From positions 4,359,329 to 4,423,328 of the forward strand of contig JAHRHZ010000002.1 in NCBI GenBank assembly GCA_024137785.1: 64,000 nucleotides of DNA, written 5' to 3'. A program made the position numbers and the translations under genes. Positions 2,920 to 34,422 of this stretch are shown piece after piece (position 1 is the stretch's first letter; the number at the start of each line of letters is the position of its first letter). The notes under the pieces are model-generated. The model did not search any database. It had not been told where the DNA came from and saw nothing but the letters and a program-made list of their open reading frames with translations. The stretch is from Ginglymostoma cirratum (Eukaryota).

Positions 2920-4341
2920 GATTGTAAAGCAGCTACATTTGTTTCCTTTTAAAAAAAGGAGACAGACCATGAAAATATCTGCAAAACATCAGCAGCCAAA
3001 GTAAGACTGCAATATTGAACAGCATGCAATCCCAGCCTTAGACCAGTGCAGAAAGATTCCTGAAAATAATTGTAAACATTACAAACATCCTGATAGCAAT
3101 TCTAAATAATCCCATCTGTTGAACTAATTAATCCTTTTGGACGTCAGTGAAAGGAAACAAAAGGGCTATTGCTTTTGAAGCATCTTTGAAGTACAGTATC
3201 CTCTAATTCTATTTCACTGGAGTCTGGGTGTGACAGGGCATAGATACAGGGACAATGTTTAATTAGCATCAAGCTATAGGTTTTTAAATTTGACACATGT
3301 TGGTAGGCAAGAACAGACACCTCACTGCATTTTTGCCCCTAAACTGTAATCTCATTAGTAAGAGGCAAGCTTCTGATGGAGTAGCCTGAACTACCTGAAA
3401 TAGCCACCACGTTAGAAATAAATAGTGACTCATGCTGATTGACTGGTCTAGGTAACAAAGTCAGCACAAGAACTTTCATCCAAGCAAAGTGCAGGATCAT
3501 GAGAAATTGGAGTTATGTACTATGGCAGAAATAGGAACTGAACATACTGTAGAAAGCAGCATAGTAGGATTGGATTGTCTTTGTTAATCAAAAAGCTATT
3601 CTCCAAGTTCAGCAGTTCATAGGAAAGGTAAATTAGTACTGGCCCTTATTCTATTGAAAGAGTGCAAAAATAGGAAGGTTTTCCAAAAAAAAAACCTGTA
3701 AATTGCTAGTGTAACTACACCCAGAACAGTGAACAGTACGTTCCCCAGATAAAGACCGATATAATAGAATTTAAAAAAGTTTACTAGGTATATGGAGAGA
3801 TCATACAGAGTTTGAGCTTGTACTCAATGGAGTGCATGTTGAGAAGCTTATTGTAAAATTCAGATCAGCCATTTCATGAACGTCAGAGCCAAGTGACCTC
3901 CTTCTGCCGTGAGTGGTTGTAATACTGCGATTTAGAGCTTTAAAGAACAAAACTATTGGAAATGCTCCCACATGCAAAGGCGACCACTCAGTACATAGAG
4001 CTGTATAGTACAGCTGAATAAACTGTACAATTTACAACACCAGGTCCATAGTCTTACAGGTTACAGTAAGAAGTGCAGGTTTGTTTTAAAAGAAATAAAA
4101 GATTTCCACTTTAACAAAGCTGACAAAAGATTCCAAACGCTTACTGCCCTCCGATGAGAAAGTTTCCCCCATCACCTCTAATCCTTCTAGTAATCACTTT
4201 AAAAATCAGTCCCTAAAGTCTCCACGTTAGGGTAATCACAATTTCAAGTTGTGCCTGATGCACTCTAGTCTAGGTGGGGGCAGTAATGTTAAAGAGACTA
4301 AGTTTCCCCCCCGGGGTCTACAGGCTGCACTGGGCTCTTAC

Positions 4342-4444
4342 CGGCTCCGCTGTCCCTCTCGCCGTTAAAGATAACCAGGACCGCGATAAGGAAAGGGATC
4401 CGTATCCACAGAGAGCGGGAAGCAGCGCCACCCAGCGACAGCAT
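4342..4444 (-). CDS. Probable MHC class II beta chain, exon 1 (signal peptide); the rest of the gene lies beyond the window's left edge
   Basis: Not in the ORF track. ATG at 4444, MLSLGGAASRSLWIRIPFLIAVLVIFNGERDSGA + G, then a GTAAGA donor; 103 nt, phase 1. CpG-rich, has a hydrophobic core, and lies downstream of an X1/X2-Y module. It resembles shark class II beta leaders from memory; no beta-1 exon is visible to confirm. Confidence 0.75.
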
Positions 4445-4498
4445 AGTTATACTGTAACAGTCACAAACTCACACTGAGTGCGGCTGGGGGGGAGCTGT

Positions 4499-4510
4499 CT
4501 TTAAATAAAG
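4499..4510 (-). promoter_or_regulatory. TATA-like element upstream of the putative beta exon 1
   Basis: CTTTATTTAAAG on minus, about 55 bp upstream of the ATG and just downstream of a CCAAT at 4521. Confidence 0.45.
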
Positions 4511-4535
4511 ATCCGGGCAACCAATCAATCAGCAC

Positions 4536-4691
4536 GGAAACTGGACCAACCAATCAGAGTGGAAACTGGACCAACCAATCAGNNNNNNNNNNGGAAACTG
4601 GACCAACCAATCAGAGTGGAAACTGGACCAACCAATCAGAGTGGAAACTGGACCAACCAATCAGAGTGGAAACTGGACCAACCAATCAGAG
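4536..4691. repeat. 25-bp tandem repeat GGAAACTGGACCAACCAATCAGAGT; each unit carries a Y box (CTGATTGGTT on minus)
   Basis: CCAAT at 4550, 4575, 4607, 4632, 4657 and 4682, with identical units. A 10-N gap at 4583-4592 means the copy number is uncertain (at least 6 as assembled). Confidence 0.95.
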
Positions 4692-4730
4692 GGGTAGATC
4701 CAAATGAACTTTGGATGCCGTACATCAGGA

Positions 4731-4830
4731 ACAAAAACAGAAGTTGCTGGAAAAACTCAGCAGGTCTGGCAGCATCTGTGAAGAAAAGGTCAGAGTTAAC
4801 GTTTCGGGTCCGGTGACCCTTCCTGAGAAC
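4731..4830 (-). mobile_element. Same short element family, inserted inside the beta promoter
   Basis: Near-identical to 2823-2919. The hammerhead core is mutated (CTCAGGA). Confidence 0.8.
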
Positions 4831-4930
4831 CTGCTCACAGTAGAGTTATGTAAGGCCAATCAAGATGACGCAGGACATATCCAATCACGGTAGACTAATA
4901 CTGGTCCAATCAGCATAGTGAAGCGATGGC

Positions 4931-4974
4931 CCAATCAGAGACGAGCTACGCACCTTCGTCATCTGTTGCTGTGG
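4931..4974 (-). promoter_or_regulatory. X1/X2-Y module of the putative class II beta promoter
   Basis: Minus strand CCACAGCAACAGATGACG (X1 plus CRE-like TGACG X2; compare HLA-DRA CCTAGCAACAGATG), a 21-bp spacer, then a perfect CTGATTGG (4938-4931). Confidence 0.85.
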
Positions 4975-5504
4975 GAAGCAAATCCCGTTTAAAAAAGATT
5001 TAATTAGTCGGATCATATAGGTCAGCCTCTATAACCCAGTGCCGCGGCGGCGGAGGAACGTGGCAGCATCGGTGGAGATATAGAGATGAAGATTCGGTTC
5101 TTCTGATGCTGCTGGGTCTGCTGTGTACCTCCAGCACCATACTGTGTTGTCTCTGACTCCAGCATCAGTTGCTCTTACTATCTCTGGGTCAGCCTATAGT
5201 CATGAATCTCGAACTTAAATCATGAGTGGTACTGTGGTTCAGTGATTGGCATTGTTGTCTCAGCTCTAGGGACCTCTGTTTAATTTTGGAGTTGGGTGAA
5301 TCGCTGCGTTGAATTTGCACGTTCTTCCCCCACCCCTAATGGTGTAGGTTTATGTAGGATGCTCATTATCCAAATGGTCTCATCCTGCACTGTAGGGGGC
5401 ACTATCATGGTCTACATCATCCTGCTTTCAAGGGACTGGTGACCAATCAAAAGCAGGGGTCACATCAGTTTTGAAGAAGGTTAGAGATGTTGGCTTTATC
5501 CACA

Positions 5505-7050
5505 CTGGTGCAGTGCCTTAGTGATTAACCTATTGCCACACTTCACCAGGTACCCAATTCCAGCCTTGAGCAGCTGTCTATGTGGAGTTTGCATATTTTC
5601 TTTCTGTCTGTGTGGGCTTTGTCTGGGTGCTCTGGTTTCCTCTGACAGTCCAAAGATCTACAAGTTTAGGTGCGTTGGCCATGGGAAATGCAGGGTTAAG
5701 ACCATAAGACCACAAGACGTCGGAGTGGAAGTAAGGCCATTTGGCCCATCAAGTCCACTCTGCCATTTAATCATGGCTGATGGGCATCTCAACTCCACTT
5801 ACCCACACTCTCCCTGTAGCCCTTGATTCTTTACGAGATCAAGAATTTATCAATCTCTGCCTTGAAGACATTCAACGTCCCGGCCTCCACCGCACTCCAT
5901 GGCAATGAATTCCACAGGCCCACCACTCTCTGGCTGAAGAAATGTCTCCTCATTTCCGTTCTAAATCGACCCCCTCTAATTCTAAGACTGTGCCCACGGG
6001 TCCTAGTCTCCCCACCTAATGGAAACAACTTCCCAGCGTCCACCATTTCTAAGCCATGCATTATCTTGTAAGTTTCTATTAGATCTCCCCTCAACCTTCT
6101 AAACTCTAATGAATACAATCCCAGGATCCTCAGCCGTTCATCGTATATTAGGCCTACCATTCCAGGGATCATCCGTGTGAATCTCTGCTGGACACGCTCC
6201 AGTGCCAGTATGTCCTTCCTGAGGTGTGGGGCCCAAAATTGGACACAGTATTCTAAATGGGGCCTAACTAGAGCTTTATAAAGTCTCAGAAGCTCATCGC
6301 TGCTTTTATATTCCAATGCTCTTGAGATAAATGACAACATTCCATTCGCTTTCTTAATCACAGACTCAACCTGCAAGTTAACCTTTAGAGAATCCTGTAC
6401 TAGCACTCCCAGATCCCTTTCTACTTCGGCTTTATGAATTTTCTCACTGTTCAGAAAATAGTCCATGCCTGTATTCTTTTTTCCAAAGTGCAAGACCTCA
6501 CATTTGCTCACATTGAATTTCATCAGCCATGTCCTGGACCACTCTCCTAAACTGTCTAAATCATTCTGCAGCCTCCCCACCTCCTCCGTACTACCTGCCT
6601 GTCCACCCAACTTCGTATCATCGGCAAACTTCGCCAGAATGCCCCCAGTCCCTTCATCCAGATCATTAATATATAAAGTGAACAGCTGCAGCCCCAACAC
6701 TGAACCCTGCGGGACACCACTTGTCACCGGTTGCCATTCTGAAGAAGAGCCTTTTATCCCAACTCTCTGCCTTCTGTCAGACAGCCAATCCTCAATCCAT
6801 GCCAGTAACTCACCTCAAACACCATGGGCCCTCATCTTACTCAGCAGCCTCCTGTGAGGCACCTTATCAAAGGCCTTTTGGAAGTCTAGACAGATAACAT
6901 CCACTGGGTTTCCCTGGTCTAACCTACTTGTTACCTCTTCGAAGAATTAGAAGGGTTACTGGGATGGAGTAGGTTGGTCTGGGTAGGATGCTCTTTGCAC
7001 AGTCTCTGTGGACTTGTTGGACCAAATGGCCTGTTTTCATGCTATAGGAT
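5505..7050 (+). mobile_element. Degenerate HE1-like tRNA-derived SINE, split by a CR1 insertion
   Basis: TGTGGAGTTTGCA...GGTGCTCTGGTTTCCTC...GTCCAAAGAT core at 5575-5698; the SINE 3' part resumes at 6952. Confidence 0.7.
5699..6951 (-). mobile_element. Young 5'-truncated CR1 LINE (RT C-terminal part)
   Basis: ORF 5831-6727 has SGVPQGSVLG and KFADDTK. TCTTATGG-type tail; 7-bp TSD AGGGTTA (5692-5698 and 6952-6958). Confidence 0.95.
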
Positions 7051-18169: not shown

Positions 18170-21100
18170 ACTAGTTCTGTCGATGCGTAACTGAGTCCAG
18201 GGTTTACCTGGCCATTCCCATGAATGTGGGGGTGCTGCCAATGGCAGTGTTCATCCTTGTTAGCCGTCTGGGCACTGCTGCACCAATGCAGCTATGTTGG
18301 CATCCAGCCCCAGCCACCAGACATAGTTTCTTGCCGCATCTTCAGCTTGGAAACCCGTGGATGACCCCAGTGGAGTTCGACCAGTATCTGGTGGTGACCT
18401 TTACTCAGGACAATCACTCTTGCTCCCCAGTGATATACCATCCTCTACGGTGATCTGGTCTCGCCAAGTCCAGAAAGGTTTCAGTCCAGGATGCGATGGC
18501 CCTTCTGTTTTCCCATTACCACCAGCTGTTTCAGTTTCACTAGGATAGGATCTTTTGTGTCCACAGTTGGATATTGTACACAGTGACAGGAAAGCTGTCC
18601 AAAAAGTTCAAAACCAAAACAGATTCTTCCGGGGAGGCACCATAGGTGGAGTATATGCTAGTGGGAAGTGGCTCAAAGCATCTGCATTAATCATTTGGGT
18701 TTCTGGATGGTGTTCTAGCTTATAGTTGTACATGCTGAGAATAAGGGCCCACTGCTGAATTCTATCAGACGTTATGGGCAGCACCGCCTTGTCTTCCTTC
18801 ACTAGCCCTAGCAGGGGTTTGTGATCTGTTACTATGAGAAAGGCCCATCTGTAAAAGTGCCAGTGGAACCTCCTCACACCAAAGACGACTGCCAAACCTT
18901 CCTTTTCTGTCTGGGCATATCTGTGTTCAGCATCAGCCAAAGTCCAAGAAACATATGCTATTGGGCATTCCTCTCTCTGTTGGGCCAGCAGTGAGCCAGC
19001 ACTATCCCGATACCGTATTGGGAGGTATCTGTTGTCAACACCACCTCTTGCTTCAGATTGTACTGGGCCAACACCTTAGATGAGATGAGCTGCTTTTTCA
19101 CTTCCCTAAAGGCTGCTTCTTGGCTATATGACCATTTCCAAGGCTGAACCTTTTTCAATAGCAAACATAAGGGTGCCAACTTAGAGGGCAGGATACGTTG
19201 AATTTTTTGTAATAATCCACCAGCCCGAGGAAAGGACTAAGCTCTGGCACAGGCATGGGAGCTGGGGCTCCTTTGATTGCCTTCACTTTCTCTTCCAGCA
19301 GGTGTAACCTGGGCTTGTTGACTCTGTAACCCAAGTAGGTCACTTGGAGTGCCTGGAGCACACACTTTTACCTTCTAAGCCATACGCTCACTTGGAAGAA
19401 ACGTTTAAGCACTATGTCTGAGTTCTCCAAATGCTCTTTATTGGTCTCCCTGGTATTAGCACATCATCCCCAAATAGCAACCTGGGATAGCCCTTTTAAA
19501 ATGTTCTCCATCATCCACTGGAAAAGGCCGAATAGCAGTCTTGTATATTGCTATAAACCCTTATGGGTGTTAATTGTGGCAGACAAATGTGACTCCTCAT
19601 CCAGTCGCAATTGCAAGTAGATGTGGCTCATGTCCAGCTTCGTAAAGGACAGCCAACACCACCCCCTGACCAATTTTGCGTACAAGTCCTCTATGCAATG
19701 GATCAGGTATTTATCCAGCTGTGAGAAGCGGTTCACTTTTTGCACAAGATCCCTCCAAAGGCAAACCGAGCCATCAGGCTTCACAATCGGTATGACTGGT
19801 GCTGCCCATTCCGCAAACTGCACTGGTTTAATAATTCCTTCACTCTCCAACCTCCTGATTTCCACCTCTACTTTTGGCCACAAGACAAATGGCACTGGGT
19901 GGCCCTTGCAAAATCTCAGAATTGCACCCTGGTCAAGAGGTAAAGATGGCTTTGGCCCTTTTGATCGTCCCAAGTCCTTTTTGAAAAACTCCTGGGTATT
20001 TCATTAGGACTTCACTGATGCAGCAATTTTCCAACCAAAAAATGTTGAGCCAACCTTGGTGAATTTTTCTCAGTCAGTTCCATCTAGTAGGTTCTGAGGA
20101 AGGGTCACCAGACCCGAAACGTTAACTGTTTTCTCCTTCACAGATGCTGCCAGACCTGCTGAGCTTTTCCAGCAACTTTGTTTTTGTTCCTGATTTACAG
20201 CATTCGCAGTTCTTTTGGTTTCCATCTAGTAGGCTTGGGTCTGCACTGAGCAGTGGTAACGACACCAACTGTTACTCACAGGAGACTGGAACCAAAGTTC
20301 GACCCTCAATGTGCAACGGTTGCCCAACGGTTTTCAGTCTGGCTGAGGTCTTGTGCAAGCTTAAAGGTTGGAGTCCTGAGCAAATCTTGTTGAAGAGAAA
20401 TTCTGCAACCACAGACACAGCTGCGCCAGTATCGACCTCCATGGGAACTGGGCGACTATTTAACCAAACATTAATTTTAATTAGATCTGATTTGGGTGTC
20501 ACTAAGCAATTTAATTGTTCCAAACCACATGTAGGGGAACTTTCTAGGGTGTGCAGTCTCCTAGGTACTGGCCTCTGGGTTTTCCTACTCAAGCCAGGCC
20601 CTGCAGGACTTCTTTACTGTCTCAAGCCTGCATACTGACATCAATGACAATGGCTTACCAGCCAGATCCTGATCAACAGATTAGCACCCTGGCCAAGGCT
20701 TGGCTTTGTTGTGTGGTTCTGTTGTGGGTTAGCCTAGGGTCCCTCTGCTCAGGACATGCCCTGCATTAGGCACTGCGACTGCCTACACTCACACTGTGTT
20801 CCCCGGCTCAGTTGGACATTGAGGGTGTCCACCTCCATTGGGATGCCCTGCCATGCTCCACTTGTCACATTTTCTAATGACAAGGCCAGCTGTAGTACCT
20901 GTTTGAAGTCCAGTTGTGCTTTAGCTAATAGGTGCTTTTCCATGGTTACGTCATTAATCCCACATACCAAACGGTCTGTTACCATCTCATTCAGGGTTAA
21001 CCCAAAATCACATGCCTCTGCCAGTTGTCGCAACCTTGTCAAAAATCTCAATATGGATTCCCCCAGTTCACTAACGGCCGAATAAACTGATAACGTCCCA

Positions 21101-22543: not shown

Positions 22544-22689
22544 CTAGATGCCATGCTGCTGAGCTTGCAGCCGCTGTCTCTCTTTGATCAGTAAGATGAT
22601 TCCTACAACAGCACTGATAATTCCCAGGGTGAGTCCCAGAGCACAGATTATTGTCCCATGTCCAGACTTTTCCTCAGGAACTCCCTGAT
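22544..22689 (-). CDS. DAA: MHC class II alpha chain, exon 4 (connecting peptide, TM, cytoplasmic tail, stop)
   Basis: TTTCTTGTTACACAG acceptor. DQGVPEEKSGHGTIICALGLTLGIISAVVGIILLIKERQRLQAQQHGI* has the class II alpha TM pattern CxxGxxxG. TAG at 22546-22544. Total CDS 67+249+282+146 = 744 nt = 247 aa + stop. Confidence 0.96.
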
Positions 22690-22749
22690 CTGTGTAACAA
22701 GAAAGAAAGGAATAATGCTGTGAAGGTGGTGGACTACTTTCTTGAATAG

Positions 22750-23720
22750 CTATGGCATACATGGTGAAGGTACTCCTACAGTATTGTTAGGAACTTCCAC
22801 AATCTTGACCCAGTGATGAGGATGGTGTAATATATTTCCAAATTTGGATTTGGAGGGGAGACTTGAGGGAACTTGCAGGTGCTGGTGTTTCAATATGTCA
22901 GCTGTCCTTGTCTATCTAATTGGTAGAGGTAACACATTTGCAAATTGGTGCAGTAGAAGGCTGGTCGAGTTCTTGCACTGCATCTTGTAGATAGTACACA
23001 CTGCTGCGACTGTGCCCTGGTGGTGAATACGGTGAATATTGAAGGTGATGAATGAGGTGCTAATCAATTAAGATGATTTGCCCAAGATGATGTCAAGGTT
23101 TTGGAGTGCCATTTAGACAAGGGGAGACAATTAAGCTCCTGACTTGTACCTTACTGACAGTGGACAGATACTGGGGAGTCAGGAGGTGGGTTATTCACCA
23201 TTGAACACCCAGCTTCTCACCTGTAGGCACAGTATTAATGAGCCTGGTCCAGTCAATGGTAACTCCCACGGATTTTGATAGTGGGGAATCTGACAACGGT
23301 GGTGTCAAAGTTTGATACTTATGTCCTTTTTTGTTGGAGATGATTAATTGGCAGGTATGTAGCACAGATATTATTTATATCCTAGCAGTCTGAATCAGCA
23401 TGTTGTTCAAGTCTTGCTGCATGCGCTGATAATTTGTATGTAATATTTGGACGTGACTGCTTCAGTATCTGAGGAGTCACGAATAGTACTGAACATTGTG
23501 CAATCATCAGTGAACATCCTTGCTTCTGACCTTATGGTGGAGGGAAGGTCATTGATATCAATTAAGGAAAGCTATCATTCTTACTAGGTCTCACCTATAT
23601 GCTACTCTGGATTTTTAGAAATGTGGTTGACTCTGACTGTCCTCTGAAATGTGCTAGAAAACTACTTAGTTCAAGGGCACTTAGGGACAGGCAGTAAATA
23701 CTGGCCATCAGCATTTTTAA
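22750..23720. mobile_element. Degenerate LINE of the same family as 10300-12140
   Basis: Shared motifs catcttgtagatagtacacactgctgc and cttctgaccttatg.tggagggaaggtcatt. Confidence 0.7.
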
Positions 23721-23848
23721 AAAAAAATGCAATTCTGGTATTTGGTTATTATTCAGTACCTTGTATTTGCATGTTTCTCTTTTATTTTGAGTAAAGCTAA
23801 AAAGTTAAAGCTTTCTAATACCAAATTATAATCAAGTCTCTCACTGAC

Positions 23849-24130
23849 CCCAGAATACAGTTACTGGATCCTGTAGGCTCGAATGTTCCACATGACAGGA
23901 GTACATGTCTCCAGGACTCGGGACAATGCTCAGGTATGAAAATCTACGAAATGTAAAATCCTCTTTAATATAGAACTCAGTGATGTTATCGCCATCAGTC
24001 ATGGGCTCATTGTTTCTTCTCCACTTCATGGTGATGTGTGGAGGGTAGAATCCATCAGCGAAACAGATCAATGTGTTCAGCTGCCCCCATTCTACAAGGT
24101 CCTCAGAATACACAGAGACTTCAGGACGAA
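23849..24130 (-). CDS. DAA: MHC class II alpha chain, exon 3 (alpha-2 C1-set Ig domain)
   Basis: TACTTTACAG acceptor and GTCAGT donor; 282 nt. VRPEVSVY...GQLNTLICFADGFYPPHITMKW...DMYSCHVEHSSL is a typical class II alpha-2 domain with both Cys and the Trp. Confidence 0.97.
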
Positions 24131-24899
24131 CTGTAAAGTAAAGGTGAAACACATAAGAGTGCAATATAATCATATCCAAAATTAGATAAGCAGTGTGTAG
24201 TGAGAATCCCTCAGAGTATAACGAAAGTGAGAAAAAAAACTGTAAATAATCTAAGAGAAGAAAACAAATCTAAGAAAGGGAAGTGAAAGAGTTACTCTGA
24301 ATCTTTCTCCCCTAGAACATTGTTAATAATCTGGCTCAACCAGTTCAAATGCATCAGTTGAGTTATTGCAATTGCAGGAGGGGTAACTTCCTCCACCCTA
24401 CAATTCAGCTCATTTGACAACAAAATCAGAAGACCACTCCTCTCTAACCAGACTGATGCCTAATTTAAATGCAAGTCTGCAGCAATAACAAAACTGCAGA
24501 AGTAGCAGAATTCTATCACATCAAAATGGGAGGGACACCCAACATGATTGGAAGTCTGACACAATGTCAAACAGTAGGTTAGAAGCAGCTCAGTGAATCA
24601 TTGATTCAATGTTCAGATTCACAGATAGTCCCCTGATTCCAAATTGCTTCTTCGTCATGTTTCCCCTCTGTTTATATCAGGAATATTTTGCTATCATTTG
24701 GTGTACTTGTTATTATATCTTGATCACAAGGAGCAACAGCAGTTTCAGAAAGCAATTCTCAGTGAGGCACCAGATGAAGTGGAGTTATGTATATACAGCA
24801 AATTTTGATTTAACTGACCCTTCCTCAGAACCCGAAATGTTAATTCTGATTCTTTCTTCACAGACCTGCTGAGCTTTTCCAATAACTTCTGCTTTTGTC

Positions 24900-27800
24900 C
24901 TTGTCCTTTAAACCTGACCAGGTGTCATCCCATTTTCTGACCACGATATCTTCACTACTTCCTTGCTCAGCTTCTACATTGAATGGCTTCTCATCTTAGG
25001 TGATTTCTATTTCTATCAAAACATATTATTTTCCCTTTCCTCTAGGTTCACTTACTCTTCTAACCTCCCTTAAATCCTTCATCCATACAAGCTCAACCCA
25101 TAATCATAGTTGTCCCCTTGACCTTACCCATTCATGTCATCTTAGTGCTATGTAAGGAGCCAGACTTTATAAAAGATCTTAAAGTAAGGGAACACTTAGG
25201 AGGCAGCGATCATAATATGGTAGAGTTCAGCCTGCGGTTTGAAAGAGAGAAGGCATAGTCGGATGTAATGGTGTTACAGTTAAATAAAGGTAATTACAGG
25301 GGCATGAGAGAGGAACTGACGAAAATCGACTGGAAGCAGAGCCTGGCGGGGAAGACAGTAGAACAACAATGGCAGGAGTTTCTGGGTGTAACTGAGGACA
25401 CAATACAGAGGTTCATCCCAAAGAAAAAGATTATCTGGGGGAGGATTAGACAGCCGTGGCTGACAAAGGAAGTCAGGAAATGTATCAAAGAAAAAGAGAG
25501 AGCCTATATAGTGGCCAAGAGCACTGGGAAATCAGAAGATTGGGAAGGGTACAAGAACAAACAGAGGATAACAAAGAGAGAAATAAGGAAGGAGAGGATC
25601 ACATATGAAGGTAGGCTAGCCAGTAATATTAGAAATGATAGTAAAAGTTTCTTTCAATACATAAGAAACAAACGAGAGGCAAAAGTAGACATTGGGCCGC
25701 TCTAAACTGATACTGGAAGGCTAGTGATGGGAGATAAGGAAATAGCTGAAGAACTTAATAAGTATTTTGCGTCAGTCTTCACAGTGGAAGACATGAGTAA
25801 TATCCCAACAATTAAGGAGAGTTGAGTATGGTAGGCATTACAAAAGAGAAAGTGCTAGAAAAGCTAAAAGGTCTAAAAATTGATAAATCTCCTGGCCCCG
25901 ATGGGCTACATCCTAGAGTTCTAAGGGAGGTGGCTGAGGAAATAGCGGAGGCGTTGGTTGTGATCTTTCAAAAGTCACTGGAGTCAGGGGTAGTCCCAGA
26001 TGATTGGAAAATCGCTGTTGTAACCCCCTTGTTTAAGAAAGGATCAAGGCAAAAGATGGAAAATTATAGGCCGATTAGCCTAACCTCGGTTGTTGGTAAA
26101 ATTCTAGAATCCATCGTTAAGGATGAGATTTCTAAATTCTTGGAAGTGCAGGGTCGGATTAGGACAAGTCAGCACGGATTTAGTAAGGGGAGGTCGTGTC
26201 TGACAAACCTGTTAGAATTCTTTGAAGAGGTAACAAGTAGGTTAGACCAGGGAAACCCAGTGGATGTTATCTATCTAGACTTTCAAAAGGCCTTTGATAA
26301 GGTGCCTCTCGGGAGGCTGCTGAGTAAGGTGAGGGCCCATGGTGTTCGAGGTGAGTTACTGGCATGGATTGAGGATTGGCTGTCTGACAGAAGGCAGAGA
26401 GTGGGATAAAAGGCTCTTTTTCGGAATGGCAACCGGTGACAAGTGGTGTCCCGCTGGGTTCAGTGTTGGGGCTGCAGCTGTTCACTTTATATATTAATGA
26501 TCTGGATGAAGGGACTGGGGGCATTCTGGCGAAGTTTGCTGATGATACGAAGTTAGGTGGACGGGCAGGTAGTATGGAGGAGGTGGGGAGGCTGCAGAAT
26601 GATTTAGACAGTTTAGGAGAGTGGTCCAGGACATGGCTGATGAAATTCAACGTGAGCAAATGTGAGGTCTTGCACTTTGGAAAAAAGAATACAGGCATGG
26701 ACTATTTTCTGAACGGTGAGAAAATTCATAAAGCCGAAGTACAAAGGGATCTGGGAGTGCTAGTACAGGATTCTCTAAAGGTTAACTTGCAGGTTGAGTC
26801 CGTGATTAAGAAAGCGAATGGAATGTTGTCATTTATCTCAAGAGCATTGGAATATAAAAGCAGCGATGAGCTTCTGAGACTTTATAAAGCTCTAGTTAGG
26901 TCCCATTTAGAATACTGTGTCCAATTTTGGGCCCCACACCTCAGGAAGGACATACTGGCACTGGAGCGTGTCCAGCGGAGATTCACACGGATGATCCCTG
27001 GAATGGTAGGCCTAACATATGATGAACGGCTGAGGATCCTGGGATTGTATTCATTAGAGTTTAGACGGTTGAGGGGAGATCGAATAGAAACTTACAAGAT
27101 AATGCATGGCTTAGAAAGGGTGGACGCTGGGAAGTTGTTTCTGTTAGGTGGGGATACTAGGACCCGTGGGCACAGCCTTAGAATTAGAGGGGGTCAATTT
27201 CGAACGGAAATGAGGAGACATTTCTTCAGCCAGAGAGTGGTGGGCCTGTGGAATTCATTGCCACGGAGCGCAGTGGAGACCGGGACGTTAAATGTCTTTA
27301 AGGCAGAGATTGATAAATTCTTGATCTTGCAAGGAATCAAGAGCTACGGGGAGAGTGCGGGTAAGTGGAGTTGAAATGCCCATCAGCCATGATTAAATGG
27401 TGGAGTGGACTCGATGGGCTGAATGGCCTTACTTCCACTCCTATGTCTTATGGTCTTATGTTGCCTGACTACAGTCATTGTATTGATCATAGATAAAGCC
27501 ACCGATCAATTCCATGTAACACTCCCAATTCTCCTGTAAATACACTTTCAAAAGCTATAATTTGGCTTCCATTCACATATTTCTGCAGCTACCGATTTAC
27601 ATACCCCTGAGTTCAAGTAATATAGGCTTGAAAGAATACGTCAGATAACTGGTTTGTCATTTACTATTACATCTGGCTGGGCCACATAAAGCATTATCAT
27701 GTCTTACTCTCCTGCTAAAACTTCTCACTGCTACAGGATCACCATGGGATGCAAAGGTACCCTCTGGTTTCTATTCTCTTTTACAAACTGTCTTAATCTG

Positions 27801-28600
27801 TCTACCTCACCTCCAACAATAATTGTGTGGAGTTTATGGATTTCTTTGTTACTATGATCAAGATCATCCCATCTGCTACTTCTCTCCGTTCCATTAGCAC
27901 ATCAGGACAAACTTCCATTAATGTCCCTCTCCCACAGCTCTGAACTCATATCTTTCTCTAGTTTCTTTCCTAACCCCCTCATGTCCTCTCTGAGCCCATC
28001 TTGTCCATGCAAACCACCTCCTGTTCCCTCAACCCTATTATGATTAAACTGCTAATCACCCAAATTCCCCTCTTGGTCCCTGTGTTATCTTATCATTGTT
28101 CAGTTTTCTCTCTTTCAATTATTGTTCCCTGTCCTTCAAATTTGCCATTATCTACTCTCCCCTCCAAAAAGAAAACTGACACTGTTTCCTTCTAATTTAT
28201 CCCCCCGTCTCATTTTTCTTTGCAAAATCCTTGAACGTGCGAAGACCTTCCAAATTTGCTCCCATCCCTTCTCCAACTTCACATTTAAATACCTCCAATC
28301 ATGTTTCGGTCCCTGTATCAGTACTGAAATGTCTTTTATGAAAGTCACAAATAATATCCAATGTGAATGTGACAAGGATAAACTATTCCCCTCTTCCTCC
28401 TCTGCAGCCTGTGACACAGTTGAACTCACCACCCTCCATTAACACCCCTCCACTGTCATCCAGAAAGATGGAGCTGATGTCACCTGGTTCCATTCCTATC
28501 TATTCAATCATAGCCAGAGTAATCCTTGCAATTGTTTCCCCCACACTACTTCTCAACCAATTGCTGTTCCTCGATGACTTCATCTGAAAACACAGCGTTT
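24900..28600 (+). mobile_element. Old L2-like LINE interrupted by a CR1
   Basis: LILGDF endonuclease remnant near 24990. FLCKILER...LQSCFGPCISTE...KVTNNI...SAACDTV RT remnant in ORF 28122-28442. Confidence 0.65.
25154..27460 (+). mobile_element. Young CR1 LINE, 5'-truncated ORF2 with a few disruptions
   Basis: ORFs 25268-25705, 25822-26409 and 26436-27374 (NYRPISLTS, YLDFQKAFDKV, KFADDTK); ends in a TCTTATGGTCTTATG tail. Confidence 0.96.
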
Positions 28601-29569
28601 ATTCTCACATGCACATTATTTGTCACGGCCCCTCATAAACCCCTAAGCCAACACACTCTGTGTCCATCATGAGCAGATCTCAGAAGCTATGTAGAGATGA
28701 ATCAAAAAAATCTAAAAATCTAAAGCAGCTCTGAATGAATAACATTCCCATTCATGCAAGCAGCAAAGATTTTAATTTTTTTTAAGTCCAATCACCTCAC
28801 CACCATCTCCCTTGGCTCTTCCACTGTATAAGATTGTTTGTGCAACAGAGTTTCAGATCAACAGAAATTTCCTCTGGCTAAAAATGAGAGCGCCTAAATT
28901 ACTGTCTTTGGTCTCCATTACAAGTTCCACTTCCTAATCACTAATTTTATACCTCTTCCTGGTAACTGTTGTAAACTTTTGAAAGTAAGTAAAGGAGGAG
29001 ACCTGAAATTAATTTTTATTCCATTTAGATTTATTCAGAGAGTCAAACCTAACAAATATATATCTCCCGTCACAAGCTCTCCTTGTGTTGTGTAGGATTT
29101 GAAACAGAACCTCCGGGGTTAAGAGTCCAATTATCATCCAACTGACATATTGGGACTTTTATGTTCTCTTTATCTTTGCTCAAGTAATGATCAAATGAGA
29201 GTCCCCGAGCCACATACACTTATCCTGCTTTCTGCAATTAAGAGTGAAGAGTGCTCTGCAGTCACCATTGCAGTGAGGCAGAGTGGGAAGAATGTTGTGC
29301 AGTCAGTTCTTGTTGAAAAAACAAGCAAGAGATAAACCCCAGAAAGTGTATAAGTTCATTGTCGGTATTAGGAAAGGGAGAACCTGAAGGCAGGAAGGTC
29401 AAGCCAAAATTCAGACCTGACACAGATGCTTGTTTTTTGGGAGTGAGTATCTATCAACTGGTCGTAGCCCTATTCTTTTCTCAAGTTTTAACATATATAC
29501 ACATTGGTGGTAAAGTTAATATAATATATAAAAAGCAACATAAATAACTAATTAACTAAAACTCAGTCT

Positions 29570-32530
29570 CACTTTCCTTCTCACTGTTTCCCTTGATGCT
29601 CCCTCTCTCCTTTTCTCTCCCTGTCACTCTCCCTTTCCCCCATCTCACCCTTCCCACTCTCTCACTCTCCCTTTCCCCCTCATTCCCCTTTCCTTTACTC
29701 CTCTCTCACTCTGCCTTTCCCTCACCCTTATTCACTCTCCATTACCCACTCTCTCACTCTCCCTTTCCCTCCCTCTCACTCTCACTTTCCCTTCCCCTCA
29801 CTCTCCCTGCCTCTCCCTCTCACTCTCCCTTTCCTCCTCTCAATCTTCCTTTTGCACACTCCCTTATTCTCCCTTTCCTCCCCCTCACTTTCACTTCTCC
29901 CTTTCTCTCCCTCAGTATCTCACTCTCTCCCTTTCCCTCTCCCTCACTCTGTCTCCCCTTCCTTCCTCCAACTGTCCGTTTTTTATTTTCTCACTATTCC
30001 TGTGTCCCTCTCTCTCTCCCTTTCCCTCCGCCTCACTCTGTCTCCCTTTCCCCCTCTCTGTCTCACTTTCCTCCCCCTCACTTTCCCTTTTCCACCTGCT
30101 CACTGTCCTGTCCCCCTTCTCTCACTGTCTCTCCTCTTTGCTCTCCCATTCCAACTCACTGTATGCCTTTCCCCTTCTCTCAATGTCACTCTATCATTCC
30201 CTCATCCTCACTCACCCTTTCCCTTCTAGCCCTCTCCCTTTCACATTCTCTCACTCTCCCTTTCCCTCTCTCATTCCCTCACTCTCATTTTCCCTGCCCC
30301 TCCCTCACTCTCCCTTACCCCCTTACTCTGTCTCCCTTTCCCTCCCCCTCATGCTCCCTTTCTCCATCTCTCACTCTCCCTTTCCCTACCCCTCACTGTA
30401 CCCCTTTTCTCCTCTGTCACTTTCCTTCTCCCTTGTCATCACTCTCCCTTTTCCTTTCCCTCCCTCTCATACATTTCCCTCCCCCCTTTTCTCCGTTCCA
30501 ACTCTCTCTCTCTCCCTTTCCCTCCCCCTCACTGTCCTGTCCACCTCTCTCACTATTCCTTTCACTCTCACTTCTCTTCACTCTCCCTTTCCCTCCCCCA
30601 CCCTCCATCACTCTCCCTTTCCCTCTCACTGTCTCACTCTCTATTTCCGTCTCCTTTCCCCACTGTCTCACTCTCACTTAGCCTTTCCCTCATCCGCACT
30701 CTCCCTTTCCCTTCCCCATTTCCCATTCCCACTGTCTCACTCTCTCTTTTCCTCTCCCTTACTTACCCATTTCCCCTCTCTCACTCTCCTTATCCCAAGC
30801 TCTCATTCCACCGTTGCCTCTCCCTGTCTCCCTTTTCCCCACACTCTGTCTCCCTTTCTCTTCCCTCCACTCTCATTTTTCCTACCCCTCATTCTCCCTT
30901 TCAACCCCCGCTCTTCCTTGTCCCCTCTCTCACTCTTCCTTTTCAATAGACAATAGACAATAGACAATAGGTGCAGGAGTAGGCCATTCGGCCCTTCGAA
31001 CCAGCACCACCATTCATTATGATCATGGCTGATCATCCACAATCAGTATCCTGTTCCTGCCTTATCCCCATAACCCTTAATTCCATTACCTATAAGAACA
31101 CTATCCATCTCTTTCTTGAAAGTATCCAGAGACTTGGCCTCCACTGCCTTCTGGGGCAGAGCATTCCATATATCCACCACTCTCTGGGTGAAGAAGTTTT
31201 TCCTCCTCTCACTCGATCCTCCTCTCTCCCTTTCCCACATTCTCATTTTCCCTTTCCCATTCCCTGTCTTGCACTCTCCCGTTCCCTCTCCCACACTCTC
31301 CCTCCCTCTCACTCTCCCTTTCCCCTTCTCACACTCTTCCTTCCCCTTTCCCTTTCTCCAATCTCCTCCCCGACACTCCGTCTCTCTTTCACCATCTCTC
31401 ACTCTCCCTATCATTCATCCTCACTCTCCCTTTCCCTCATCCTGTCTCCCTTTCCCTCCCTTTCACTCTGCATTTCCCTCCCTCCCTTTCCCACATTCTC
31501 AGTCCTTTTCCCTCTCCTTATTCTCCCGTTCCCCCTCTCTCACTCTCCTGTTTCCCTCTCTCTCACTCTCCCTCCTCCTCATTTCCCCTTACCATTTTCT
31601 CATTCACCCTTTCCTACTCTTTCACTCTCCCTTTCCCTTTCCCTCCCCCTCCCTTTGTCTCCCTTTCCCATGCTCACTCACCTTTCCCTTCTCCTCACTC
31701 TCCATTTTCCTCCACCTTTCTCCCCTTCCCACTCTCTCTCCCTTTCCGTCACCCCTACTCTCTGTTCTCCCCCCTCACTGTCCCTTTTTCCTTCACATGC
31801 TTCCTTTCCCCCCTCTCACTCTCCCTTTCCCTTTCCCTCACTCTCCCTTCCGGTCCTTGTCTCTCCTGTTCTCTGTCTCTCACTCTCCTTTTCCCACTCT
31901 CACCCTCCCTTTCCCAGTTATTCTGTCTTCCTTCCCCCTCTCTCACTCTCACTCTCCCCACTCATCCTTTCCCTTCCCCCAATCCCCATTTCCCTCCCCC
32001 TCACTCTCCATTTTGCTCCACCTCTTCCCCTTCCCACTCTCTCTCTCCCTTTCCCTTGTTCCCACTATCCAATTCCCTCCCTCTCCCTTTCCCTCCCCCT
32101 CACTTCAAATTCCACTCCTCACTCTTCCTTTTCCCCTCTCTCATTGTCCCTCCTCCTTGCTCACCCTTTCCCACTCTCTCATTCTCCTTTTCCCACACTC
32201 TTACTCTCCCTTCCCCTCTTACTCTCCTTTCCTTTCCCCTCACTCTTCTTTTCCCTTCCCCTCACCTTCCCTTCCTCCCTTTCACTTTCATTTCTCCACA
32301 CTCTACCGTTCCCATTCTCACTCTTTCTCCTTCGCACTCTCCCTTTACCACTCTCTCATTCTACCTTTCCGACTCTCTCACTCTCCCTTCCCTTCCCCCT
32401 CACCCTCCCTTCCCCTCCCCCTCACTCTCTCATTCCCTCCCTCTCACTCTCCCTTTCTCACTCTCTGTCTTTCTCTCTCTTCCCCTCTTCCCTTTCCCAT
32501 TCTCTCGGTCTCCCTTTCCCCTTTTCACCC
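29570..32530. repeat. About 3-kb CT-rich (GA-rich on the transcribed strand) degenerate minisatellite in alpha intron 2
   Basis: Recurring CTCTCACTCTCCCTTTCCC-like units with almost no G on plus. A smaller patch occurs at 33540-33830. Confidence 0.95.
30943..31208 (-). mobile_element. CR1 3' end inserted in the CT tract
   Basis: (CAATAGA)n tail; NFFTQRVVDIWNALPQKAVEA. Confidence 0.9.
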
Positions 32531-33540
32531 ATAAGATGTAGGAGCAGAATTCGGCCATTTGTTCCATCAGTTTCCTCTGTTATTCAATCATGACTGATAT
32601 GATTCTCAACCCCATTCTCCTGCCTTCTCCCCATAACCTTTGATCCCCTTACCAATCAAGAACCTATCTGTCTCAGCCTTAAATACACTCAATGACATGG
32701 CCTCTACATGTTGGCAAGGTGACTCAGTGGTTAGCCTCACAGCATCAGGGACCCAAGTTTGATTCCACCCTTGCGTGACTGTGTGGAGTTTGCACGTTCT
32801 CTCTTATGTCTGTGTGGGTTTCCTCCAGGTGCTCTGGTTTCCTCACACAGTCCAAAGATGTGCAAGTTATGTTGATTGGCTACAGTAAAATTGTCTACAG
32901 ATGTGCAGGCTAGGTGAGTTAGTCATGATAAATCAGGATAGGCTTTTTGGGGTAGGTGCAGACTTGTTAGACTGAATGGCCTCTTTTTGCACTGTAGGGA
33001 TTTCCATTGCACTGAGTTCCACAGATTAACTACTATCTGGCTGGATAAATTCCTCATCTCAGTTCTAAAGGATTGTATCTTCACTCTGAGGCTGTTGCTC
33101 AGGTCCTAGTCTCTCCCACTATTGGAAACATTTTCTCTATGTCAACTCTATTCAGGCCTCTCAATATCCTGTAAATTTCAGTTAGATCCCACCCCCCCTC
33201 CCCCAATCATCCTTCTAAACTCCATCAAGTACAGACCCAGAGTCCTCAGCTGGTCCTCATATGACAAGCCCTTCACCCCCAGGATCATTCTTGTAAACCT
33301 CCTCTGGACCCTCTCCAACAGCAGCACATCTTTCCTTAGATACTGGGCCCAAAACTGCTCACAATATTCCAAACACAGTATGACCAGAGTCTTACATAGC
33401 CTGAGCAATACATCTCTGCTGTTACATTCTACTTCTCTTGAAATGTATTTGCCTCCTAACTGCAACTGAACCTACATGTTAACCTTTGTGCTTCAGATAT
33501 ACGAAGCCTTTCCCCATTTAGAAAATATTCCCATTTTTCC
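32530..33540 (-). mobile_element. CR1 3' portion with a nested HE1-like SINE (about 32712-33002, plus strand)
   Basis: LEYCEQFWAQYLRKDVLLLERVQRRFTRMI; SINE core GGTGACTCAGTGGTTAGC...TGTGGAGTTTGCACGTTC. Confidence 0.85.
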
Positions 33541-34173
33541 CATTCTTTCACTCACCCTTTCATTTTTCCCAGTCTCTCCCTCTCTCACCATTTCTCTCCC
33601 TTCCTTTTCCATTCTTTATTCAACCATTTCCCCTCTCTGTATATTTCTCTCTTCCTCCATCTCACTCCCCCCGCCCCCACTCCCTGTCTTTCCCAATCTC
33701 TTACCGTCCCTGGTCTCTCACTCTCATTATCATTATATCCCCTTCCCTCTGTCACTATTTCAAACCCCCCACCCCCGGCACCGCTTTCCTTCCTATTCGC
33801 ACTATTCAACTCCTTTATTTTTCCCAGGTTGGCCAAAGAAAAGTCAATCCGGGTGAAATACAAAACCTTTGCACCGCTGAATCATTGGTGCCCACATCCT
33901 TGGCCAACATTCCGTGTTCAAATCAAAGCGGCAGTTTATTTCCCCCCGTACAGAGACTGACGGGGACACACAGCAGGGAAACAGGCCGTTCGGCCCATCT
34001 GAAGGAGCCTGCGGAACAGAAATCTTGGCACCACGTGCAGGCAGATATCCCGGTGACAGCCTCTGAAGGCTCAGTCAGTCTCTCTCACACACACAGGGTT
34101 TCTATCTCACTCCCTGCCCGCACCAGCCCCCAGCTCCCCCGGCCAGGATCGGGCAGTCACATACGGACCTTAC

Positions 34174-34422
34174 CTTTCGGTTCCGGGGTCCCGGCGGACA
34201 GGTTCATGTCAACTTTCAAATTGTTTTTGACGATGGCGATATTGGCTGAGATCGCCGCCTCTCCTCCCTGCATGTGGCGACCGGCAAACTCGGGGATCCG
34301 GGCCACCTCCTTCTTCAGGTTGAAGTCCATGTAGAAAACCTCATCTCCGTCCTCCTCCAGATCAAAGTGTTTCTCGGGACTGCGCTGCTGCACAAAATAC
34401 ACCTGGGTATAATCGTACAGAT
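34174..34422 (-). CDS. DAA: MHC class II alpha chain, exon 2 (alpha-1 peptide-binding domain)
   Basis: TGTCTCTTTCAG acceptor and GTAAGG donor; 249 nt. (Y)LYDYTQVYFVQQRSPEKHFDLEEDGDEVFYMDFNLKKEVARIPEF...ANIAIVKNNLKVDMNLSAGTPEPK contains the class II alpha-1 motifs DGDExFYxDF and NIAIxKxNL, plus an NLS sequon. Confidence 0.97.

What the first reader, a model, noticed from the sequence alone, without database searches (positions are those of the whole stretch)
4856..4974. Second, older CCAAT array with exact 25-bp phasing but fully diverged spacers, anchored on the X box
Seen: CCAATC starts at 4856, 4881, 4906 and 4931, exactly 25 bp apart, while the intervening sequence shares little identity. 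The last one is the Y box paired with a near-consensus X1/X2. The period equals that of the young array nearer the gene. Inference: keeping only the core and the spacing suggests selection for a phased NF-Y ladder (about 2.4 helical turns), with the young repeat a recent re-expansion of one rung. I do not know of this architecture in class II promoters.
Basis: partly seen in the sequence, partly recalled or inferred. Interest (0 to 1): 0.75.

Follow-up and report, generated by a model that had tools for sequence, protein, structure and literature searches.

The report
Evenly spaced CCAAT ladder, shark MHC promoter
Next to the classic X-Y control module of a probable nurse-shark MHC class II beta gene sit three extra copies of the Y-box core at exact 25-base steps with unrelated DNA between them, a pattern that looks selected for but whose function and age could not be tested here.

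Summary
CCAATC(A) starts at 4856, 4881, 4906 and 4931, exactly 25 nt apart. Only that 7-mer is shared; the 18-nt spacers are alike at chance level. No comparable ladder occurs elsewhere in the 64 kb outside true repeats.

The gene lies on the minus strand. The last rung is an inverted CCAAT 21 nt downstream of an X1/X2-like box. A 137-nt transposon copy separates the ladder from the 25-nt tandem array.

A neutral relic is unlikely: seven adjacent invariant columns have a bound of about 5e-5. The 25-nt step falls in the 24-27 nt class of NF-Y-bound double CCAAT boxes in human cells.

Against a simple NF-Y ladder:
- Two rungs carry T at -1, reported as very harmful to mammalian NF-Y binding.
- No similarity links the ladder to the young unit beyond the core.
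- The module lies about 500 nt from the ATG.
- The beta-chain identity of the gene is inferred only.

The scan had noted the neighbouring array on this same window (s1-879742), not on other DNA.

Verdict: a real feature, a new variant of known kinds, partly supported.

The parts
4856..4862 (-). Rung U1: TGATTGG on the gene strand (CCAATCA on +). The 5' flank of CCAAT is GG, the best fit to the NF-Y matrix among the four rungs.
   Evidence: matrix rules from PMC6843132
4881..4887 (-). Rung U2: TGATTGG. There is a T at -1 of CCAAT, predicted to be poor for mammalian-type NF-Y.
4906..4912 (-). Rung U3: (C)TGATTGG. There is a T at -1 of CCAAT.
4931..4938 (-). Rung U4, the Y box proper: CTGATTGG, 21 nt downstream of the X1 decamer on the gene strand. 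There is a C at -1 of CCAAT.
4954..4975 (-). X1/X2-like box on the gene strand: CCCACAGCAACAGATG overlapping TGACGAAG.
   Evidence: the only 0-mismatch GCAACAGATG in the window. The X-box motif itself is recalled, not taken from a matrix.
4836..5093 (.). Single-copy, CpG-retaining segment bounded by repeats. It holds the ladder, the X box and 118 nt upstream. CpG observed/expected is 0.97, against 0.26 for the window.
   Evidence: (depth 0 to about 100 here, against up to about 1e7 in the flanking repeats)
4699..4835 (.). Short transposon copy inserted between the young array and the ladder. Other copies lie at 20086-20218 (87%) and 2825-2921 (90%). It is flanked on both sides by GTAGA.
4520..4698 (-). 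Homogeneous 25-nt tandem array with 7 visible CCAATC cores plus a 10-N gap, in the same orientation as the ladder. This is the 'young array' of finding s1-879742.
4499..4509 (-). TATA-like TTTATTTAAAG, starting 65 nt upstream of the ATG. The start of transcription is inferred from it and is not mapped.
   Evidence: reading of the sequence; inference
4342..4444 (-). Leader exon coding part: ATG at 4444, 34 codons plus 1 nt, GT donor at 4341-4340. Intron 1 runs off the start of the window.
   Evidence: No homologue was found and no Pfam match.

Best explanation
The ladder is part of the upstream control region of a minus-strand gene that is most likely the nurse-shark class II beta gene (DAB) paired with the DAA alpha gene in the same window.

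The most distal rung (4931) is the Y box of a canonical X1-X2-Y module. Three further copies of the Y-box core (TGATTGG) follow it towards the gene at exactly 25-nt steps.

The cores and the spacing are held by purifying selection while the DNA between them has drifted to chance identity. The most likely reason is that the rungs are docking sites for a row of close-packed CCAAT-binding NF-Y trimers, with 25 nt being about the smallest centre-to-centre distance seen for NF-Y pairs.

Such a row would extend the enhanceosome platform, and possibly its nucleosome-free tract, from the X box towards the start site. The start site here lies unusually far away, after a transposon insertion and a 25-nt tandem array of further Y-box units.

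Shown: the pattern, its uniqueness in the window, the X-Y register, the orientation, the CpG retention, and that the ladder is single-copy.

For: - Exact 25/25/25 steps of an invariant 7-mer, with spacers at chance identity.
- With 0 of 18 spacer columns invariant, the per-column invariance is at most 0.153. Seven adjacent invariant columns at any of 25 offsets then have probability at most 5e-5; with random local composition it is 4e-13.
- No other such ladder in the window outside true repeats.
- 11 of the window's 26 TGATTGG lie in 4521-4937, all on the gene strand.
- The X1 decamer and the Y box are 21 nt apart. S and Y lie 16 and 20-22 bp from X in mouse NLRC5-occupied SXY modules, and the same paper calls the spacing in human class II promoters tightly constrained (PMC4374748, passages).
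- In human cells NF-Y-bound regions with two CCAAT boxes peak at 24-27 and 36 bp. That platform is shared with RFX5, the X-box factor (PMC4889920, section 14 read in full).
- Precisely spaced same-strand CCAAT arrays are working promoter elements elsewhere (PMC1802594, passages).
- All four rungs have C at +1 and A at +2, as the NF-Y matrix prefers.
- The segment 4836-5093 keeps its CpGs (observed/expected 0.97 against 0.26), as unmethylated regulatory DNA does.
- The ladder is not a repeat family: depth is 0 where the flanking repeats reach up to about 1e7.
- Context: class II alpha exons upstream on the same strand (Pfam MHC_II_alpha, E = 1.1e-15). The published nurse-shark DAA primer matches exactly. 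DAA and DAB are linked (PMC8010645, passages).
Against: - Rungs U2 and U3 have T at -1 and U4 has C. A T at -1 is described as extremely detrimental for mammalian NF-Y and essentially never seen in ChIP-seq (PMC6843132). At most two of the four rungs therefore look like good NF-Y sites.
- All evidence for selection comes from four units in one genome. No orthologue, allele or paralogue was seen.
- The X box lies 516-531 nt upstream of the ATG. Human class II S-Y modules lie 50-100 bp from the start site, and displacing one by 80-150 bp takes the start site out of the nucleosome-free region and significantly reduces induction (PMC2677874).
- No S box is recognisable.
- The 34-residue leader has no detectable homologue among 1.84 billion representatives (0 hits), so 'class II beta' is not shown.
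- The ladder has no read support (depth 0 in 4 of 4 runs). The tool warns that holes prove nothing and that human-like reads are dropped.
- 25 nt is 2.4 helical turns, so neighbouring factors would not face the same side of the helix.
Confidence: 0.5

Rival explanations
1. The cores and spacing are constrained, but the reader is not NF-Y alone, or not NF-Y at all. Some factor that needs only TGATTGG would bind instead. Recalled candidates are a PBX/TALE-type homeodomain partner and the single-strand Y-box protein YB-1. This factor would bind the extra rungs alone or together with NF-Y bound at U4 and U1.
For: - The invariant block is TGATTGG, with all four bases found at the position 3' of it on the gene strand, counting the young unit.
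- Mammalian NF-Y needs a purine and rejects T at that position.
- PBX3 shares the double-CCAAT platform with NF-Y in human cells.
- A 2026 preprint describes composite TALE/NF-Y elements (search listing and abstract start only).
Against: - No motif matrix for any such factor was tested here.
- The block matches the NF-Y core with its preferred +1 C and +2 A in 4 of 4 rungs.
- The distal rung sits in the exact NF-Y position of an X-Y module.
- The candidate factor names are recalled, not derived from a call.
Confidence: 0.2
2. The ladder is a neutral relic: the decayed far end of the same 25-nt minisatellite. Its cores survive by luck or by a mutational quirk, and only the young array or the single X-Y module matters.
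For: - Same period, same orientation and same core as the adjacent array.
- Array edges commonly escape homogenisation (general knowledge).
- Two rungs already carry a flank that is bad for NF-Y, as decaying sites might.
Against: - With the spacers at chance identity, keeping 7 adjacent columns in 4 of 4 units has a bound of 5e-5 at best.
- There is no net length change in three spacers despite saturated substitution.
- There is no similarity to the young unit outside the core.
- Tandem Repeats Finder does not see it at minimum score 30.
- After removing the transposon the ladder lies 28 nt, not 25, from the array.
Confidence: 0.1
3. The module is not the working promoter of a class II beta gene. 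It could be a distal enhancer, a disabled promoter pushed away by insertions, or the control region of a different or dead gene. Reading the ladder as a class II promoter architecture would then be misplaced.
For: - The leader has no homologue and no Pfam family, and exon 2 is outside the window.
- The X box is more than 500 nt from the ATG, with a transposon in between.
- There are no poly(A) RNA reads over 4594-4693 or 4854-5053, and next to none over 5054-5093 (mean depth 0.65 or less).
- No RNA holder of the leader stretch is on record.
Against: - The leader exon is an open signal-peptide-like frame with a GT donor in phase 1 and retains CpG (observed/expected 0.84).
- It sits downstream of DAA as expected for a linked DAB.
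- A TATA-like box and a CCAAT lie at suitable distances from the ATG.
- Absence of reads upstream of a start site is what a promoter should show.
Confidence: 0.15
4. The pattern is a chance alignment of four CCAAT boxes, or an assembly artefact.
For: There is no read support for 4854-4973, and an N gap lies in the neighbouring array.
Against: - CCAATC occurs 54 times on both strands of 64 kb, and three further hits at fixed offsets are vanishingly unlikely by chance.
- No such ladder exists elsewhere outside repeats.
- The ladder is in unique sequence, which does not invite collapse or expansion.
- Record 8 of run X1 matches 4994-5144 with 0 differences.
Confidence: 0.02

Closest known systems
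MHC class II S-X-X2-Y (SXY) enhanceosome module (RFX, CREB, NF-Y, CIITA)
   Same: There is an X1-type box with an overlapping CRE-like X2, followed 21 nt later by an inverted CCAAT. The order and orientation relative to the gene are correct. The architecture and its fixed spacing are described in PMC7866136 and PMC4374748.
   Different: - Three extra Y-box cores follow at 25-nt steps, and then at least 7 more in a tandem array.
- No S box is recognisable.
- The module is about 500 nt from the ATG, instead of 50-100 bp from the start site as in human genes.
Multi-CCAAT NF-Y platforms: double CCAAT boxes 24-27 or 36 bp apart in human NF-Y-bound regions, and arrays in the cyclin B2, cdc25C, thymidine kinase and Mrps12/Sarsm promoters
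   Same: Several same-strand CCAAT boxes sit at a precise distance inside the 24-27 bp class. RFX5 is one of the factors found on that platform. An array of four same-strand boxes works as a promoter core.
   Different: - Those arrays sit close to start sites of housekeeping or cell-cycle genes and are not coupled to an X box.
- Here two rungs break the -1 rule.
- Here the ladder is far from the ATG.
Motif duplications in mammalian class II promoters (T-box duplication in dolphin and orca DQA, 11-bp triplication in orca DRA, S duplications)
   Same: Short regulatory motifs in class II promoters do get duplicated and fixed (PMC6155461, passages).
   Different: Those are young duplications of other motifs, still recognisable as copies. 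None is a Y-box ladder or periodic.
Decayed edge of a minisatellite
   Same: It has the same period, core and orientation as the adjacent homogeneous 25-nt array.
   Different: The units share nothing but the core. Neutral decay does not produce that.

Membership tests
MHC class II SXY module | X1 (RFX) box with an adjacent X2 (CRE-like) box | tested here: met
   CCCACAGCAACAGATG overlaps TGACGAAG at 4975-4954 on the gene strand. It holds the only 0-mismatch GCAACAGATG in the window. The motif was compared with a recalled consensus, not with a matrix.
MHC class II SXY module | Inverted CCAAT (Y box) at a fixed distance downstream of X (20-22 bp in PMC4374748) | tested here: met
   There are 21 nt between GCAACAGATG and CTGATTGG. 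How that paper delimits X may differ by a few nt.
MHC class II SXY module | S/W box about 16 bp upstream of X | tested here: inconclusive
   Nothing resembling the recalled S motif, or a second X-like box, is seen in 4976-5010. No matrix was available.
MHC class II SXY module | Module lies 50-100 bp upstream of the start site (human genes, PMC2677874) | tested here: inconclusive
   The X box is 516-531 nt and U1 is 412 nt upstream of the ATG at 4444. The start site is not mapped. There are no poly(A) RNA reads on 4594-4693. This leans towards not met.
MHC class II SXY module | Drives an MHC class II gene | tested here: inconclusive
   Only the leader exon is in the window. phmmer found 0 hits and Pfam found no family. 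Context: it lies downstream of DAA, and DAA and DAB are linked.
MHC class II SXY module | Occupied by RFX, CREB, NF-Y and CIITA | not testable with these tools
   Needs ChIP or footprinting in shark antigen-presenting cells.
Multi-CCAAT NF-Y platform | Two or more same-strand CCAAT boxes at 24-27 (or 36) bp | tested here: met
   Steps of 25, 25 and 25 nt; distance classes.
Multi-CCAAT NF-Y platform | Each box fits the 10-bp NF-Y matrix (purine at -1, C at +1, purine at +2, no T in the flanks) | tested here: not met
   +1 C and +2 A in 4 of 4 rungs. A purine at -1 in 1 of 4 (U1), T at -1 in 2 of 4 (U2, U3) and C in 1 of 4 (U4). The feature is met for U1 only, and for the young units (AA).
Multi-CCAAT NF-Y platform | NF-Y bound in vivo | not testable with these tools
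   No shark ChIP data were at hand.
Decayed tandem repeat | Residual similarity among units beyond the core | tested here: not met
   31% identity against nulls of 26-27%, P = 0.11 and 0.21. Tandem Repeats Finder is silent at score 30. Comparison with the young unit gives P = 0.27.

The most novel reading that the evidence does not exclude
The class II beta promoter of an early-branching jawed-vertebrate lineage uses a row of close-packed Y-box sites as a histone-like 'bridge'. NF-Y trimers, with or without a TGATTGG-reading partner, sit at exactly 25-nt centres and keep DNA nucleosome-free between a displaced X-Y enhanceosome and the start site.

Selection has held both the cores and the exact spacing through complete turnover of the spacers, and the homogeneous 25-nt array is the still-evolving part of the same device. 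That would make copy number of Y boxes a tunable, possibly allele-specific, dial for class II expression.
Probability: 0.2. Interest if true: 0.7.

Novelty: new variant of a known kind. Interest (0 to 1): 0.45.

Why it matters
The SXY module is described as fixed in order, orientation and spacing in classical and non-classical class II promoters, and its distance to the start site matters in human cells. A class II promoter from a shark that keeps the X-Y register but adds a strictly spaced row of Y-box cores would show two things. The enhanceosome platform can be extended in modular fashion. And NF-Y-type close packing at about 25 nt is old and under selection.

It would also give a natural system for asking how far an SXY module can act, and whether Y-box copy number tunes expression of a highly polymorphic gene.

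As it stands it is a single-genome sequence pattern with a good statistical case for constraint and no functional or comparative data.

My full-text searches found no paper describing a multi-Y ladder in a class II promoter or any shark class II promoter analysis. Subscription journals are mostly not covered, and supplements were not opened.

Tried and rejected
- phmmer of the 34-residue leader against 1.84 billion representatives gave 0 hits. I therefore had no beta-chain handle.
- The search for homologous proteins with the alpha2 reading frame gave 1 hit among 1 candidate: P0001, Chiloscyllium plagiosum alpha-chain-like, 67% identity.
- Read laying on 4594-5190 used one poly(A) RNA run of the species (X23), one run of the same species (X1), and one run each of organisms B (X7) and D (X12). 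It left 4854-4973 uncovered in all four.
- The search of earlier findings by sequence found nothing.

**Origin of the ladder**
- I looked for residual homology among the units and to the young unit. Neither is significant, so I could not decide between an old duplication and one-by-one gain.
- I rejected a continuous lattice with the young array. Removing the transposon and one GTAGA copy leaves 28 nt; without a target duplication it leaves 36-37 nt.

**Other X-Y modules in the window, such as the alpha-gene promoter**
- Two regular expressions and a 1-mismatch decamer search found only the one at 4931-4969.
- The near-match at 45184-45193 lies in retroelement-like sequence with the motifs in the wrong order.
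- The alpha leader and promoter were not located.

**Other checks**
- A CRE-like TGACGCA in the U1 spacer occurs at chance frequency in the window: 2 found, 2.0 expected.
- Gene identity from the literature: the 1994 nurse-shark class IIB paper is not held, and the catshark paper had nothing on gene order.
They were searched exon by exon.

Full report
**What is there**

On the + strand CCAATC starts at 4856, 4881, 4906 and 4931. The four 25-mers share only CCAATCA. Column counts are 4 of 4 for those seven positions, and 2 or 3 of 4 for the other eighteen.

The spacers agree at 34 of 108 pairwise positions. Shuffled spacers average 27.9 (P = 0.11) and genomic controls at the same spacing average 29.4 (P = 0.21).

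I scanned the whole window for any hexamer forming at least four rungs at any one period from 12 to 60 nt. Such ladders occur only in the 25-nt tandem array at 4520-4691, here (CCAATC and CAATCA only), and in a low-complexity tract at 29.6-30.4 kb. Chains of CCAAT with steps of 23-28 nt occur only in the array, here, and as one two-member pair at 22923/22948. Eleven of the window's 26 TGATTGG lie between 4521 and 4937, all on the minus strand.

**Surroundings**

The gene is on the minus strand.
- An ATG at 4444 opens 34 codons plus one base of a signal-peptide-like frame, which ends at a GT donor at 4341-4340. The intron runs off the start of the window.
- A TATA-like TTTATTTAAAG lies at 4509-4499.
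- Going upstream on the gene strand come the homogeneous array (7 visible cores and a 10-N gap) and a 137-nt transposon copy at 4699-4835. That copy has relatives at 20086-20218 (87%) and 2825-2921 (90%) and is flanked by GTAGA on both sides.
- Then come the four rungs, and then CCCACAGCAACAGATG overlapping TGACGAAG, an X1/X2-type box. It is the only 0-mismatch GCAACAGATG in the window, and it lies 21 nt from CTGATTGG of the last rung.

In mouse NLRC5-occupied SXY modules the S and Y boxes lie 16 and 20-22 bp from X, and the same paper calls the spacing in human class II promoters tightly constrained (PMC4374748, passages). The module is described as fixed in order, orientation and spacing (PMC7866136, passages). 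The last rung is therefore a Y box in canonical register. I see no S box.

Removing the transposon and one GTAGA copy puts the last array core 28 nt from the first rung, not 25.

**Which gene**

Upstream on the same strand lie class II alpha exons:
- the alpha1 frame matches Pfam MHC_II_alpha (E = 1.1e-15);
- the alpha2 frame matches C1-set (E = 3.5e-20);
- the transmembrane exon is near 22562-22702.

The published nurse-shark DAA-lineage primer matches 24104-24125 exactly. DAA and DAB are genetically linked (PMC8010645, passages). Earlier notes of this scan also call the genome nurse shark.

The leader itself has no detectable relative: 0 hits among 1.84 billion representatives and no Pfam family. 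'Class II beta (DAB)' is therefore an inference from position and from the X-Y module, not a result.

**Is it more than neutral decay?**

If the four units are homologous, the spacers set an upper limit on conservation. With 0 of 18 columns invariant, the per-column invariance is at most 0.153 (95% bound). Seven adjacent invariant columns at any of 25 offsets then have probability at most about 5e-5. With random local composition the figure is 4e-13.

Three spacers have also kept their exact length while substitutions saturated. Given the usual share of insertions and deletions among mutations (general knowledge, not computed), that also argues for a constraint on spacing.

The segment 4836-5093 keeps its CpGs: 14 in 258 nt, observed/expected 0.97, against 0.26 for the window and 0.20 for the next 700 nt. 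However, 34 of 903 tiles of 140 nt have as many CpGs as the ladder tile.

The ladder is single-copy DNA. In one search the flanking repeats draw depths up to about 1e7 from three organisms, while the ladder draws none.

**What the step of 25 means**

In human cells almost half of NF-Y-bound regions in K562 hold two good CCAAT boxes. Their distances peak at 24-27 and 36 bp, and this platform is shared with FOS, IRF3, Sp1, Sp2, PBX3 and RFX5 (PMC4889920, section 14 read in full). Arrays of precisely spaced same-strand CCAAT boxes work as promoter cores in Mrps12/Sarsm, and are cited for cyclin B2, cdc25C and thymidine kinase (PMC1802594, passages).

So 25 nt is the known close-packing distance for NF-Y pairs. 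It is not a whole number of helical turns, and 'phased' in the helical sense does not fit.

NF-Y bends DNA, resembles H2A-H2B, and has been proposed to evict nucleosomes at class II promoters. Human S-Y modules sit 50-100 bp from the start site. Moving one away by 80-150 bp takes the start site out of the nucleosome-free region and significantly reduces induction (PMC2677874, passages).

Here the X box is 516-531 nt from the ATG. A row of NF-Y sites between the X box and the start site is therefore an attractive way to keep the two in contact. That is inference.

**Results against the NF-Y ladder reading**

- The mammalian matrix wants a purine at -1 and rejects T. A T at -1 is called extremely detrimental in vitro and essentially never seen in ChIP-seq (PMC6843132, passages). 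The rungs have G, T, T and C at -1. Only U1 looks optimal, as do the array units with AA. U2 and U3 look poor, although all four rungs have the preferred C at +1 and A at +2. Shark NF-Y may tolerate this, the rungs may be read by or with something that needs only TGATTGG, or the two rungs may be decaying.
- The young unit shares nothing significant with the ladder outside the core (P = 0.27; the longest shared string is CCAATCAGAG with U4). 'Re-expansion of one rung' therefore rests on the shared period alone.
- Contigs of organisms B and D match the array part at 80% or more. The array may thus be old and merely homogenised, and 'young versus old' may be the wrong contrast.

**Reads**

The stretch 4200-4582 is held by six runs of the species (shares 0.26-0.60), and to small shares (0.05-0.13) by runs of four other organisms. 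No holder is on record as RNA.

I laid 4594-5190. All four runs show zero depth from 4854 to 4973.
- The poly(A) RNA run also shows none on 4594-4673, 0.1 on 4674-4693, none from 4974 to 5053, and at most 0.65 on 5054-5093.
- Run X1 is low-depth DNA of the species: a 151-nt record on 4994-5144 with 0 differences.
- Organisms B and D show pieces on the array and on 4974-5093, but not on the ladder.

The tool states that holes prove nothing and that human-like reads are dropped silently, which could apply to an X-Y module. So there is no orthologue evidence, no allele evidence, and no read confirmation of the ladder. Whether the RNA sample expresses the gene at all is unknown.

**Literature on novelty**

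Full-text searches for shark or fish class II promoters and Y boxes gave no description of multiple Y boxes in a class II promoter. The nearest is duplication of other motifs in cetacean class II promoters, with cited S-box duplications (PMC6155461, passages).

In mouse H2-T10 and H2-T22, Y motifs lie 48 bp from X. That is close to where the second rung sits here (46 nt).

Supplements were closed and most subscription journals are not held, so an earlier description cannot be excluded.

**Verdict**

The pattern is real, unique in the window, and attached to a canonical X-Y module. It is best explained by selection on a row of closely packed Y-box-type sites, with NF-Y the likeliest but not a clean fit.

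It combines two known kinds, the SXY module and the multi-CCAAT platform, in a way I did not find described.

Noticed in passing
window 4699-4835, 20086-20218, 2825-2921: A short (about 100-137 nt) transposon family with target-site duplications: AGATGGAA at the 20-kb copy, CTGCTTTACAAT at the intron copy. It draws summed depths up to about 1e7 from DNA contigs of organisms B and D, about 2e6 from run X1 of the same species, and about 1e4 from poly(A) RNA reads. Many joints are on opposite strands, suggesting a hairpin-forming element.
   Followed up: partly
window 4866-4872: A CRE-like heptamer TGACGCA (TGCGTCA on the gene strand) sits in the spacer between rungs U2 and U1. There are only 2 in the window, which is the chance expectation, so it may mean nothing.
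   Followed up: yes
window 4594-4693 (read laying): Contigs of two other organisms (B and D) match the 25-nt array units at 80% or better. The 'young' array unit is therefore not confined to this species, or occurs elsewhere in their genomes.
   Followed up: no
window 4583-4592: The 10-N gap lies inside the 25-nt array, so its copy number in this assembly is uncertain.
   Followed up: no
window 4452-4475 (minus strand): Just upstream of the ATG the gene strand reads like a splice donor (GTGAGT) followed 21 nt later by an acceptor-like TGTTACAG. That is too short for an intron. An acceptor here would allow an unseen non-coding first exon further upstream.
   Followed up: no
window 22562-34440 (minus strand): Nurse-shark class II alpha gene of the DAA lineage: alpha1 exon about 34190-34440, alpha2 about 23850-24130, transmembrane exon about 22562-22702. 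About 10 kb of retroelement-rich intron lies between alpha1 and alpha2. Its leader exon and promoter were not found in the window.
   Followed up: partly
window 29593-32593: About 3 kb of low-complexity repeat gives long open frames rich in Ser, Leu, Pro, Phe and His (up to 524 aa) on the + strand. It also holds the only other hexamer ladders in the window (period 22).
   Followed up: no
window 5094-5800: A second high-copy repeat begins at about 5094, bounding the unique promoter segment on its far side. It is also abundant in RNA and in the other organisms' contigs.
   Followed up: no
same genome, about 5.49 Mb beyond the window's end (note s1-879115): Another first-reader note reports a class I promoter with two stacked X-Y modules. 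If that is real, duplication of X-Y parts may be a theme in this genome.
   Followed up: no
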